A stretch of DNA of 64,000 nt from assembly GCF_036321535.1 (NCBI RefSeq), contig NC_087449.1, positions 37,696,001 to 37,760,000 on the forward strand, in the 5' to 3' direction. The notes under the pieces were generated by a model that ran no database searches, was not told where the DNA came from, and was given only the letters and a program-made list of their open reading frames with translations. Positions 20,401 to 25,847 of this stretch are shown piece after piece; position 1 is the first letter of the stretch; each line of letters begins with the position of its first letter. The DNA is from Camelus dromedarius. Taxonomy: Eukaryota. A program made the translations under genes and the position numbers.

Positions 20401-23400
20401 AATTCCTACTAAGTTTTAAGTCTTAGCTTAAATTTTACTTCCTCAGAAAGGACTTCATTAGCTCTCTTAACTGTAAGACTTCATAGCATCTTATACTTCG
20501 CCTCTGTAGCACTTATCACAATCAGGAATAGTTTAACAATTATCCCCCTCACTAGACCGAAAGCTCCATGAGGGCTTGTGTATCTGTAACCCAGGTACTT
20601 AAGAATGCCTGGCATCTGGTAGACAGTAAGTATTTGTTGAATGAATGAATCAATCCTTCAAAGATCAATTCCCATGTCCTACAAGTAACACCGAGATCGC
20701 CTTCTGTCAATTTCTAAAGCACAATTTAGCATCTGATCAGTCTGTTTTCATTCAACTTCATACATCTAAGCACTGGATAAGAAGTCTGGAAGGTCTCCTT
20801 TCTTTTCCCTTGATCTGGCACTAACTTGTGTCCCAAACAAGCCCCATTTCCTAAGTAAGTCTCCCTTCTTCAGCACCATGAAGTTACCTGTCTTATTCAC
20901 TCTGATGGGTGGTAATGGGGTAAAATGAGAAAGTAGTTGTAAATAACACAGATTTTAACTGGAGAGGGTGCAATTAGTGCTCAAGTAAGAGGTCGGGTTT
21001 TATCTTACTTAGGCAGTAGAGGAGAGCAGGTTCAAAGTGCAGATTTTGGGGTCAGACTGCCTGGGTCTAACTATTAGCTGCACCACTTACTATCTAAGGA
21101 ACCTAAAGCAAGTAAGTATCTTAACTTTTCCACACCTCAGTTTCCTCAAATGTAAAAGAAAAACATATTACCCACCTCAGAGGGCTGTTGATAGAACAAA
21201 AACAGATAATGCCCAGCATGTATAACCACTCAGTAAATATTAATAATATTATCATCCTTATTAAACGGGACAGGTGCTAGGTTTCTTCCTGTCTTCTTCC
21301 AGCAGACTGAGGACAGCCCCAGTCATGGCTCCAGATCCTACCTGGCAGGAGGGAAACAGCTGACATCTCCTCTGGCAAAAGTGAAGCATTGAAGGTTTGG
21401 ACTGCAGGCCCAGGAGGCAGGGGATGGAGCTGCAGTTTGGCCATTCTCGGGCTCTGGTTCCCCATGGGAGATAGCTTCTTTCACAAAGTCCCTGGCACTC
21501 AGCTGCTCCAGCTCAGCACTCACATGATCCTGGGCAGCAAAGTTATTGACCAGTGCACCATACTTCTGCTCTGAGAGGAGACTGACCCGGATAGATGGCC
21601 AAAGATCCCCAAACTGCACACTGTATGTCATGTCAAAATTCTGCAGAGCCAGTCGAGTGGCAGGAAATTTGGGCTCTGTGGTGGCCTAAAAGAGAAAGAA
21701 CAGGCCTATTGGTCTTCCAGTCTTGCATCTATCCCCATACTTTCTGACCCTACCAGTACCTCAGAGCCCTGGATCCAGCTAGTGCCCACTCGTGCTTTTG
21801 CATTCTGCCTCTGCCTAACTATAAGACTTCATAGCATCTTATACTTTTCCTCCGTAGCACTTACCACAATCATAAATAGTTTTTAACAGTTTTATCTCGC
21901 TCACTAGACTGAAAGCTCCATGCGGACTTGTGTTCCCATAACCAGAGAAGAAGTATGTGAGAGAAAAGTAGTGGGAAACTGGCCTTTCCACCTCAGCGTG
22001 TGAAAGTAAGCTACAGCGCTCACAATAGCATGTGGGGGTCACCAATAAAGAGTGCACTCCCTGAGGCCTTGGAGAGGACTCTTGCGGAGGGTCTACAGAA
22101 GGCTGGAAGAAACTGTGGAGCTTAGAAACAGGAGACTCTTTCTTTCTGAACAGTCCTTCCATTTTGTAAGGCATTTTCTTGTCACCTAGCTTAGGTGAGC
22201 ACCACAACAGATTGCTCAGTAGGATACAAAAAATATCAACCATCTACACTTGATGGAGAGATGAGGGTAACTTACCTAAGGTCATGTAGTGACTGACAGC
22301 ACAATGCTCAGAATCACAGGGCTGCGGGTCATTTTGGGAAAGTTCCCAGATCCCAGGAAGGTGGGATGAGGAGAGCGCACAGAAACCTTGAGGTGTAAAC
22401 CAAAGTGGGGACTTCTAGGATGACTGCTATGGGGGTAGCAGATAAGGATATGAGTCAGGCTTAAAGAGAACAGAAGTAGATTAAAAGAAATAGAAAGACC
22501 TCAGCTGAGGCGTCAACAAGTTGGTCCTGGCTGCCACAGCTGGAAAGCTTGCTATGGCTGGCAGCCCAGTTACTGTCATGAATTTTGCTCTGGCCTGGAT
22601 TTTTGGTTTGGACAGAACTCTTGTTCTGCCTTCATTTCTTGTTATGGCGTGGACTCTTGCTCTGACCGCGACGTTTGCTATGGTGGGGACTCTTGCTCTG
22701 GCTCCGACTTCTGCCATGGCGCGGACTCTTGCTCCGGCTTCTGCTATGGTGGGGACTCTTACTGTGGTCCCGCTTTTTGTTGTGGCGGGGACTCTTGCTT
22801 GGGCTCCGACTTTTGTTACGGAGGGCACTCTTGATTGGACCCTGACTTGTGCTGTGCTGGGTATTTTCACTCTGGCCCTGATTTTCACTAAGTTGAGGAC
22901 TCTCACTCTGATCCTGATTCATGTTTTGATGGAGACTACTGCTCCCGCTCCAAGTTCTGCTAAGATGGAAATTATTGCTTTGACTCCAGCTTGTGCAAGG
23001 GCCATGGGAACTCTCACTCTGGCTCCAACTTCTGCTTTGCTGGGTGTTCTTGCTCTGGCTGTCACTACTCTGGCATTCACTAATCATAACAGTTGAACTA
23101 TAGCTGGCATTAGTGCTACAGCTGGAACTCTTGGATGAAGACAAAGGACAGCTGTAGGGGATCTGCTGGGACTCCTTGCGGGAGTCTCGAGAAGCCACAG
23201 AGTAGATGTGGAGGCCACAAGGCGTATTATCAAGGTGGCCCCGGGCTCGGGGGGCAATGGGTAAATTTTGGGGGTCAAAGGGTGTTCTCAAAGGGATAAA
23301 AGAATAGATGTGGGTAGAACAAGGAGGCGCGACAGGCTGGCGATGAGGTTGGGGTGGGCCCCTGGGAGTGCTATAAGTGCCGCAGGGGAGCCCCAGGGGC

Positions 23401-25847: not shown

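What the first reader, a model, noticed from the sequence alone, without database searches (positions are those of the whole stretch)
22632..25442. Hidden 2.8-kb intronless gene inside NSUN4 intron 1 (SHTAP-like sperm protein)
Seen: a stop-free frame of 936 codons on the NSUN4 strand fills most of the 4069-nt intron 1 (21686-25754). It has a modular layout: Pro/Cys-rich head, 15-aa repeats, PPCSTHIYS motifs, Ser/Gln linker, basic tail. All internal repeats have periods divisible by 3, which argues for coding selection rather than GC-skew artefact. Knowledge (recalled, unverified): the mouse Nsun4 locus has the alias Shtap, a testis protein reported to bind CRISP2. Inference: a nested same-strand germ-cell gene shares a locus and CpG island with an essential mitochondrial methyltransferase and is easily missed or mislabelled as an NSUN4 isoform.
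Basis: partly seen in the sequence, partly recalled or inferred. Interest (0 to 1): 0.85.

Follow-up and report, generated by a model that had tools for sequence, protein, structure and literature searches.

The report
Camelid SHTAP gene inside NSUN4 intron
The long open frame in the first intron of NSUN4 is real and is the camelid copy of SHTAP, a fast-evolving, unstructured sperm protein described in mouse in 2009 and already annotated in alpaca, so it is correct but not new.

Summary
A stop-free frame of 944 codons (25466-22635, minus strand) lies in NSUN4 intron 1 (25754-21686). Its chance probability is about 3e-12, and the other five frames carry 18-53 stops.

It is the orthologue of mouse SHTAP (UniProt C4P6S0): 46% identity, E 1e-136. 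[quoted passage not shown] The ORF sits in the same place and on the same strand in alpaca, sloth, elephant, otter, bat, monkey and deer mouse. dN/dS is 0.50-0.68, against 0.6-1.1 in shifted frames, and there are 14-31 in-frame indels per species pair.

- **Start:** the CDS probably starts at ATG 25100 (822 aa). Camelids changed the ancestral ATG to AAG and shifted the frame behind it.
- **"Intronless":** only the CDS is shown to be intronless. No AATAAA or ATTAAA follows the stop, and a consensus donor (TAG|GTAAGT, 22275) is kept in all nine other species. This suggests splicing to NSUN4 exon 2.
- **Promoter:** two conserved CRE-like sites and a GC box sit just upstream, which suggests an internal promoter.
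- **Fold:** the protein is predicted fully disordered and has no relatives outside this family.

Several databases do label it NSUN4. Verdict: already known, low interest.

The parts
25755..25846 (-). NSUN4 exon 1 coding part (MAALVV...KKKW), donor gtaagg at 25754
   Evidence: Read directly. The donor block is conserved in all species aligned.
25575..25585 (-). Upstream CRE-like site GTTACGTCATC, copy 1
   Evidence: Exact match. It is only partly conserved across species.
25496..25504 (-). GC box CTCCGCCCC directly upstream of CRE-like copy 2
   Evidence: The block CTGACTCCGCCCCTCT is nearly invariant in nine species.
25480..25490 (-). CRE-like site GTTACGTCATC, copy 2; candidate core of an internal promoter
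   Evidence: Exact match. It is conserved in alpaca, otter, bat and elephant, and sloth has the perfect palindrome TGACGTCA. Promoter function is an inference.
25101..25466 (-). Stop-free 5' extension of the frame with no ATG; probably 5' UTR in camelids. The part 25296-25101 is homologous to the ancestral N-terminal coding segment.
   Evidence: The chance of 122 open codons at this composition is 0.13, and the other two sense frames have only 1-2 stops.
25327..25329 (-). AAG where other placentals have the ancestral start ATG (M-T/N-S-S-P-P-F)
   Evidence: Nucleotide alignment, shared by window and alpaca. Read in the ancestral frame, the camelid sequence hits TAG at 25263-25261, which indicates a frame change before GKCHSD.
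22632..25100 (-). Probable SHTAP CDS: 822 codons plus TGA, about 88 kDa, pI 9.4
   Evidence: The first in-frame ATG is at 25100, context ccccATGg. It equals the alpaca 822-aa model. BLASTP to mouse SHTAP gives E 1e-136.
24475..24648 (-). 45-nt (15-aa) tandem repeats, 3.9 copies. Copy number varies among species, with a large expansion in sloth and elephant.
23196..23504 (-). Conserved core with three P-C-x-x-H-I-Y motifs and one degenerate copy (PCGTYS). The near-invariant [18 protein letters not shown] lies at 23324-23271.
   Evidence: Invariant columns in the 32-sequence alignment. This region has the lowest regional dN/dS, 0.44, and is the conservation peak, 0.92.
22637..22853 (-). Basic Ser/Arg/Lys/His tail (SKSPRH-type units), pI 12; repeats of period 18/30/36/66
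22276..22631 (-). Conserved non-coding stretch between the stop codon and the conserved donor; candidate 3' UTR part of the SHTAP exon
   Evidence: The camelid-lineage change rate is 6.7% here against 10.5% after the donor.
22268..22278 (-). Consensus 5' splice site TAG|GTAAGTTA; the first intron base is 22275
   Evidence: Conserved 300-370 nt past the stop in alpaca, elephant, otter, monkey, ruminant, bat (GTTAGT), Peromyscus (TTG|GTAAGT) and Mus-like (TAG|GTGAGT). In sloth it is at +630 because the stop is earlier. Its use is inferred.
21341..21685 (-). NSUN4 exon 2 ([24 protein letters not shown]...)

Best explanation
[quoted passage not shown] It is weakly constrained and predicted to be intrinsically disordered, rich in Pro, Ser and Cys, with a strongly basic tail. 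Its whole coding sequence sits in one exon inside intron 1 of NSUN4, on the NSUN4 strand.

In camelids the ancestral start codon is lost (ATG to AAG, plus a frame change). Translation most likely starts at ATG 25100 and gives 822 aa.

Inferred: transcription starts at an internal promoter about 100-150 nt upstream of the ancestral start. This promoter has two CRE-like sites and a GC box, the kind of site CREM uses in spermatids. The large exon is then spliced from the conserved donor at 22275 to NSUN4 exon 2, so the NSUN4 exons would serve as 3' UTR. On this reading SHTAP behaves as an alternative first exon of the NSUN4 locus that encodes an unrelated protein.

By analogy with mouse (not tested here), the protein acts in spermatids and sperm as a flexible partner of CRISP2.
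For: **Shown**
- The ORF is far beyond chance.
- It is 97% identical to the alpaca SHTAP-like model and matches mouse SHTAP C4P6S0 at E 1e-136.
- Seven other placental genomes carry a single-exon CDS at the same nested position and on the same strand.
- dN/dS is 0.50-0.68 in all 28 pairs. The upper bootstrap limit stays below 0.8 in all nine pairs bootstrapped, while shifted frames give 0.61-1.08.
- There are 14-31 indel events against each non-camelid species, all in frame.
- Window-alpaca divergence is 1.54% with no gaps in the CDS, against about 2.4-2.5% with gaps in flanking non-coding DNA.
- AlphaFold2 with 32 orthologues gives mean pLDDT 42.8 and no secondary structure.
- There is no Pfam, NCBIfam or PDB relative.
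- A profile search of 1.84 billion representatives finds 16 proteins. The 13 strong hits look like family members or fragments; their names were not looked up.

**Basis for the inferred steps**
- The CRE-like sites and GC box are conserved.
- No AATAAA or ATTAAA lies between the stop and exon 2 in the window, alpaca, sloth, otter or ruminant.
- The donor is conserved in all nine other species examined.
- Gnomon models that are pure SHTAP are filed as NSUN4 isoforms in Peromyscus and Pongo. Deer models start in the SHTAP ORF and join NSUN4 exon 2.
- CRISP2 binding and head/tail localisation in mouse come from PMC10947329 and PMC12804707, both citing Jamsai 2009.
Against: - No RNA, CAGE, ribosome or peptide data for any camelid could be reached.
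- The Logan contigs I fetched turned out to be genomic.
- Constraint is weak. Nucleotide identity of the ORF to other orders (72-78%) is barely above that of the flanking intron (70-76%).
- Male germ cells often use non-canonical poly(A) signals (general knowledge), and weak variants are present after the stop: AAGAAA twice and GATAAA. Termination inside the intron is therefore not excluded.
- A stop codon far upstream of exon junctions would normally invite nonsense-mediated decay.
- The CRE-like sites could belong to the NSUN4 promoter region, which is only about 250-350 nt away.
- The primary SHTAP paper could not be read.
Confidence: 0.9

Rival explanations
1. A fully autonomous, truly intronless nested gene. 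It would have its own promoter and its own polyadenylation site inside intron 1 and share no exon with NSUN4.
For: NCBI lists it as a separate 'SHTAP-like' gene with a one-piece CDS in alpaca and many other species. Peromyscus has AATAAA 459 nt and elephant ATTAAA 390 nt after the stop. Weak signal variants exist in the window.
Against: There is no canonical signal in the window, alpaca, sloth, otter or ruminant. The consensus donor is conserved in all species about 300-370 nt past the stop. Pure-SHTAP models are grouped under the NSUN4 gene in Peromyscus and Pongo, and deer models join the ORF to exon 2.
Confidence: 0.3
2. In camelids the ORF is translated as an NSUN4 exon 1 fusion. Exon 1 ends in phase 0. 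It would be spliced to the AG at 25459-25458, which is in frame with the open frame, so the NSUN4 ATG would replace the lost start and the conserved segment 25296-25101 would still be translated.
For: A pyrimidine tract plus CAG sits at 25458, and the frame is open from 25466 in both the window and alpaca. The segment 25296-25101 changed less on the camelid lineage (8/169 sites) than intron controls (55/497).
Against: The phase match is not conserved: sloth reads the same AG in another phase. Rodents lack the AG. An open 122-codon stretch has P 0.13 by chance here. The alpaca model starts at the internal ATG. Within-camelid divergence of the segment (4/196) does not differ from neutral.
Confidence: 0.07
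3. The camelid copy is a decaying relic. Loss of the ancestral ATG and the frame change mark the start of pseudogenisation, and the long frame is only left over.
For: ATG to AAG and the frame change are shared by both camelids. Overall constraint on the gene is weak.
Against: All 822 codons are open in two genera whose DNA differs by about 3%. There is no indel in 2466 nt, while flanks have gaps, and CDS divergence is 1.54% against about 2.4-2.5% in flanking non-coding DNA. A replacement ATG at the same codon is also the annotated start in ruminants and cetaceans.
Confidence: 0.04
4. A chance open frame produced by C/T-rich, skewed composition and not coding at all.
For: The sense strand is 37.5% C and 21% A. 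The antisense frames and another sense frame also hold ORFs of 126-191 aa in the repeat regions.
Against: P is 2.6e-12 and the other frames have 18-53 stops. The frame is kept open in seven other genomes through dozens of in-frame indels. The dN/dS signal is frame-specific.
Confidence: 0.01

Closest known systems
Mouse SHTAP (UniProt C4P6S0, GenBank ACQ99317; Jamsai et al. 2009, Biol Cell 102:93, PMID 19686095)
   Same: It aligns over its full length (46% identity, E 1e-136) and has the same nested position in Nsun4. It shares the same motifs: the 15-aa repeats, PCxTHx[20 protein letters not shown] and the basic tail.
   Different: Mouse keeps the ancestral start (MTSSPP-type). Camelids lost it and start about 75 codons further in. 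Only 46% of residues are identical. CRISP2 binding and localisation are known for mouse only.
[quoted passage not shown]
   Same: It is 97% identical, has the same start codon and length, and has the same nesting in NSUN4 intron 1.
   Different: It comes from a different camelid genus: genomic identity is 97.0% over 11.5 kb. It is a computed model with no experimental data.
Database entries named NSUN4 that are really SHTAP (Peromyscus and Pongo 'NSUN4 isoform X', dog and human TrEMBL 'NOP2/Sun RNA methyltransferase 4')
   Same: They are the same protein family and have no methyltransferase domain.
   Different: Only the name differs. The deer isoform X2 is a true SHTAP-NSUN4 fusion model that uses a ruminant-specific donor, GAG|GTAAAA. 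The window lacks this donor (GAGTCAAAA).
Gametogenetin 1 (GGN1), another CRISP2 partner in mouse testis
   Same: Both were found as CRISP2 partners in two-hybrid screens of mouse testis (PMC10947329). That GGN1 is also proline-rich is my own recollection and was not checked.
   Different: No sequence relationship was found: the profile search returned only SHTAP family members. According to PMC10947329, the two bind different CRISP2 domains.

Membership tests
[quoted passage not shown] | Full-length sequence similarity to the experimentally described mouse protein | tested here: met
   BLASTP to C4P6S0: 46% identity, E 1e-136, end to end. About 50 mammalian orthologues were found.
[quoted passage not shown] | Location inside NSUN4 intron 1, on the same strand | tested here: met
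   Exon 1 ends at 25755 and exon 2 starts at 21685, with the ORF between them on the minus strand. Seven other genomes have the same arrangement.
[quoted passage not shown] | Family motifs: 15-aa repeats, PCxTHxYS units, [18 protein letters not shown], basic Ser-rich tail | tested here: met
   Invariant columns P593-F608 and others in the 32-sequence alignment. Motif positions are and the repeats.
[quoted passage not shown] | Ancestral start codon M-T/N-S-S-P-P-F | tested here: not met
   Camelids have AAG at 25329-25327 and a frame change. A downstream ATG at 25100 is used in the alpaca model, and the same codon is the annotated start in ruminants and cetaceans. This is a lineage variant and not grounds for exclusion.
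[quoted passage not shown] | Testis-enriched expression, sperm head and tail localisation | not testable with these tools
   Known only from mouse through citing papers. No camelid RNA or protein data were reachable.
[quoted passage not shown] | Binding to CRISP2 | not testable with these tools
   Reported for mouse (PMC10947329).
NSUN4 / RsmB-F methyltransferase isoform | Contains the Methyltr_RsmB-F domain (PF01189) or shares coding exons with NSUN4 | tested here: not met
   The ORF has no Pfam hit. The stop at 22632 precedes exon 2, and an in-frame TAA at 25469-25467 separates the ORF from exon 1 if the RNA is unspliced.

The most novel reading that the evidence does not exclude
SHTAP is not a free-standing nested gene. 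It is a giant alternative first exon of the NSUN4 locus, driven by a conserved internal CRE/GC-box promoter and spliced from a conserved donor (22275) to NSUN4 exon 2. One locus would then make two unrelated proteins, and the methyltransferase exons would serve as the 3' UTR of a sperm mRNA. In addition, artiodactyls show start-codon turnover: camelids destroyed the ancestral ATG, and a new ATG 75 codons downstream (Leu in most orders, Val in pig) is the annotated start in camelids, ruminants and cetaceans.
Probability: 0.5. Interest if true: 0.3.

Novelty: already known. Interest (0 to 1): 0.12.

Why it matters
For genome annotation it confirms that the camelid NSUN4 locus carries a second, unrelated protein-coding unit. 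This unit should be named SHTAP, not "NSUN4 isoform". Knock-outs or variants in NSUN4 intron 1 or near exon 1 can hit a sperm protein as well as the mitochondrial methyltransferase.

The only points beyond existing annotation are modest. They are the loss and replacement of the start codon in camelids, and the sequence evidence (conserved donor, no poly(A) signal, conserved CRE-like promoter block) that the SHTAP exon is spliced into the NSUN4 transcript body.

Tried and rejected
- **Logan and ENA contigs as transcripts.** I fetched contigs carrying the ruminant and mouse-like proteins, hoping they were transcripts. They are genomic: they contain the NSUN4 promoter and end in simple repeats. 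They give no transcript structure.
- **Primary SHTAP paper.** PMID 19686095 is not held, so mouse facts come from citing papers only.
- **False literature hit.** The "shTAP" hit in PMC3178455 is a short-hairpin construct and is unrelated.
- **Promoter/terminator scan.** The scan is bacterial and uninformative here.
- **Family and structure searches.** Pfam, NCBIfam and PDB sequence searches gave only low-complexity noise. I did not run fold search because the model confidence is too low to be meaningful.
- **Translation of 25296-25101 in camelids.** I tested whether this conserved segment is still under constraint. The lineage rate is low (8/169), but within-camelid divergence (4/196) has no power. 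This is unresolved.
- **NSUN4 exon 1 fusion.** The in-frame fusion idea is not conserved across species.
- **"Coiled-coil" description.** A scoping review (PMC12724208) calls SHTAP a coiled-coil protein. The sequence is 18.5% Pro and the prediction shows no helices, so this is not supported.
- **Marsupials and monotremes.** Absence outside placentals was not tested at the genome level.
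Full report
**1. The observation**

The ORF listing gives 22632..25442 on the minus strand, 936 codons counted from a TTG. The frame is in fact open for 944 sense codons, from 25466 to 22635. It lies between TAA 25469-25467 and TGA 22634-22632. With the local base composition the probability of no stop is 2.6e-12. The other two sense frames hold 18 and 53 stops, and the three antisense frames hold 27-47.

NSUN4 exon 1 reads MAALVV...KKKW and ends at 25755 before gtaagg. 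Exon 2 begins at 21685 after a pyrimidine tract and AG, and reads [24 protein letters not shown]. Further NSUN4 exons map at about 16947, 13994 and 6172 on the same strand.

Tandem Repeats Finder gives these periods:
- 45 nt (24475-24648, 3.9 copies), 21 nt and 15 nt.
- 18, 30, 36 and 66 nt in the tail (22637-22853).
- Four weak, short arrays of period 11 or 4 (scores 30-37), two of them upstream of the first ATG.

CpG observed/expected exceeds 0.6 from about 25000 to 26250. This covers the NSUN4 promoter, exon 1 and the start of the ORF. No N run lies near the feature. The masked stretches elsewhere in the window were left alone.

**2. What it is**

A search of the large protein collection returned 50 mammalian proteins. 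[quoted passage not shown] That is exactly the part from the first in-frame ATG onward. The others come from carnivores, horse, bats, primates, sloth, elephant, hedgehog and rodents, at 45-81% identity.

The cluster of one rodent hit contains UniProt C4P6S0, the mouse protein named SHTAP. Direct BLASTP of the window protein against it gives 46% identity and E 1e-136 from end to end.

Two papers that cite the original description (Jamsai et al. 2009, PMID 19686095) supply the mouse facts. Shtap is embedded in the Nsun4 locus (PMC12804707). The protein binds CRISP2 and redistributes in the sperm head on capacitation (PMC10947329). The original paper is not held.

**3. Synteny and selection**

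I fetched the genomic loci of seven orthologues: alpaca, sloth, deer mouse, elephant, otter, a leaf-nosed bat and a capuchin. In six, the CDS is one piece nested in the NSUN4 gene on the same strand and starts 350-990 nt after the start of the NSUN4 model. In otter the NSUN4 model is partial, but the exon 1 donor is found 442 nt upstream of the start.

Selection evidence:
- Nei-Gojobori dN/dS is 0.50-0.68 for all 28 pairs, except alpaca-window at 0.46.
- Bootstrap 95% limits stay below 0.8 in all nine pairs bootstrapped. The same alignments read in the two shifted frames give 0.61-1.08.
- Against each non-camelid species there are 14-31 separate indel events, all in frame.
- By region, dN/dS is lowest (0.44) in the PCxTHxYS core and highest (0.74) in the 15-aa repeats.
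- Nucleotide identity of the ORF to other orders (72-78%) is only slightly above the flanking intron (70-76%) and well below NSUN4 exon 2 (82-91%).
- Between the window and alpaca, the CDS differs at 1.54% of sites with no gap. Flanking non-coding DNA differs at about 2.4-2.5% and has gaps.

Together these show a real coding gene under weak purifying selection. The window is 97.0% identical to alpaca over 11.5 kb, so it comes from another camelid genus.

**4. The start codon**

The frame has no ATG before 25100, where the context is ccccATGg.

In sloth, elephant, otter, bat, capuchin, deer mouse and mouse, the gene starts at a conserved ccATGA(C/A)(C/T)TCT, reading M-T/N-S-S-P-P-F. Pig also keeps this start. 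Both camelids have ccAAGACC at that place (25329-25327). Read in the ancestral frame, their sequence runs into TAG at 25263-25261, so the frame also changed before the conserved GKCHSD.

The upstream third of the "936-codon frame" is therefore not homologous coding sequence. An open stretch of 122 codons has probability 0.13 at this composition, and the other two frames have only 1-2 stops there.

The codon at 25100 is Leu in most orders and Val in pig. It is Met, and the annotated start, in camelids, ruminants and cetaceans. The ruminant copy has a stop 20 codons upstream of it.

One point stays open. The segment 25296-25101 is homologous to the ancestral N-terminal region and is among the best conserved parts of the intron. 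It changed at only 8 of 169 sites on the camelid lineage, against 55 of 497 in intron controls. The within-camelid comparison (4 of 196) has no power. It may simply not have had time to decay, or it may still be translated.

**5. Transcript structure (inferred)**

Upstream of the ORF lies a conserved block holding a GC box (25504-25496) and a CRE-like site, GTTACGTCATC (25490-25480). A second exact copy sits at 25585-25575. Sloth has the perfect palindrome TGACGTCA at the first site, and rodents have a perfect or near-perfect one at a third site slightly downstream. CRE sites close to the start site are typical of spermatid genes driven by CREM (general knowledge). I therefore propose an internal promoter, but these sites are also within 250-350 nt of the NSUN4 promoter.

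Downstream of the stop there is no AATAAA or ATTAAA before exon 2 in the window, alpaca, sloth, otter or a ruminant. Instead a consensus 5' splice site, TAG|GTAAGT with first intron base 22275, lies 356 nt past the stop. It is kept at +300 to +370 in alpaca, elephant, otter, capuchin, ruminant, bat, deer mouse and mouse, and at +630 in sloth, whose stop is earlier.

Pure SHTAP products are filed by NCBI as "NSUN4 isoform X" in Peromyscus and Pongo, and as NSUN4 in dog and human TrEMBL. None has a methyltransferase domain. In white-tailed deer, two models start in the SHTAP ORF and join NSUN4 exon 2 through a ruminant-specific donor, GAG|GTAAAA. The window has GAGTCAAAA there.

The simplest reading is that the SHTAP exon is an alternative first exon spliced to NSUN4 exon 2. 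The caveat is that germ cells often use non-canonical poly(A) signals, and weak variants are present.

**6. The protein**

From ATG 25100 the product is 822 aa, about 88 kDa, pI 9.4. It is 18.5% Pro, 18.1% Ser and 4.3% Cys, with a tail of pI 12 built from SKSPRH-like units.

The 32-sequence alignment has 20 invariant columns. Thirteen of them are in [18 protein letters not shown], and the rest include the related PCxTHxYS and PCGLHxY units.

AlphaFold2 with that alignment gives mean pLDDT 42.8, pTM 0.19 and no secondary structure. A profile search against PDB sequences finds nothing. A profile search against 1.84 billion representatives finds 16 proteins, of which the 13 strong hits look like family members or fragments.

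The family is thus an orphan, found here only in placental mammals. A review that calls SHTAP a coiled-coil protein (PMC12724208) is not supported by the sequence.

**7. Verdict**

The gene has been known since 2009 and is annotated in alpaca and many other mammals, so it is not novel.

Corrections:
- The CDS is 822 codons, not 936.
- The ancestral start is lost in camelids.
- "Intronless" probably applies to the CDS only.

Camelid expression, the start site, the splice junction and the initiation codon all remain to be shown with RNA and peptide data.

Noticed in passing
window 25327-25329 and 25261-25283: Camelids (window and alpaca) changed the ancestral SHTAP start ATG to AAG and changed frame before GKCHSD. 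A two-codon upstream ORF (ATG TCA TAG, 25269-25261) now precedes the ATG at 25100.
   Followed up: yes
window 25101-25296: The segment homologous to the ancestral N-terminus is among the best conserved parts of the intron (0.81-0.89). It changed little on the camelid lineage although no in-frame ATG lies upstream. It is unclear whether it is still translated.
   Followed up: partly
window 22268-22278: A consensus 5' splice site, TAG|GTAAGT, lies 356 nt after the SHTAP stop and is conserved in all nine other species examined. No canonical poly(A) signal lies between the stop and NSUN4 exon 2.
   Followed up: yes
L009:~1970-2010 (ruminant) versus window ~23826-23832: Ruminants have a GAG|GTAAAA donor inside the SHTAP ORF. 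This explains the deer 'NSUN4 isoform X2/X4' models that fuse about 405 aa of SHTAP to NSUN4 exon 2. The window has GAGTCAAAA and lacks this donor.
   Followed up: yes
protein cluster of P0002 (cetaceans): Cetacean SHTAP-like models range from 350 to 801 aa, and one is flagged LOW QUALITY. This may be truncation or decay in whales, or uneven annotation.
   Followed up: no
window 22481-23096, both strands: Secondary ORFs of 141 aa (minus strand, another frame) and 191 aa (plus strand) overlap the repetitive basic-tail region. They look like by-products of the repeat composition.
   Followed up: partly
window 36645-37160 (-): An exon-like ORF has a UQCRH (cytochrome bc1 hinge protein) type sequence. 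It is interrupted by the masked N run 36934-37073, which was left untouched.
   Followed up: no
window 52058-53272 (+): A 404-aa ORF, Ser/Ala/Arg-rich in the middle and Leu-rich at the end, looks like the large exon of LRRC41. I identified it from memory of the region only.
   Followed up: no
window 15666-15737 (+), 19454-19526 (-), 51662-51729 (+): Three Rfam tRNA matches of 37-45 bits; the first two lie in NSUN4 introns. They are probably tRNA-derived SINE heads and not tRNA genes.
   Followed up: no
L002 (sloth) and L004 (elephant), repeat region of the ORF: The 15-aa repeat array is greatly expanded in sloth and elephant compared with camelids, always in frame. Sloth also has an earlier stop that removes the basic tail.
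   Followed up: partly
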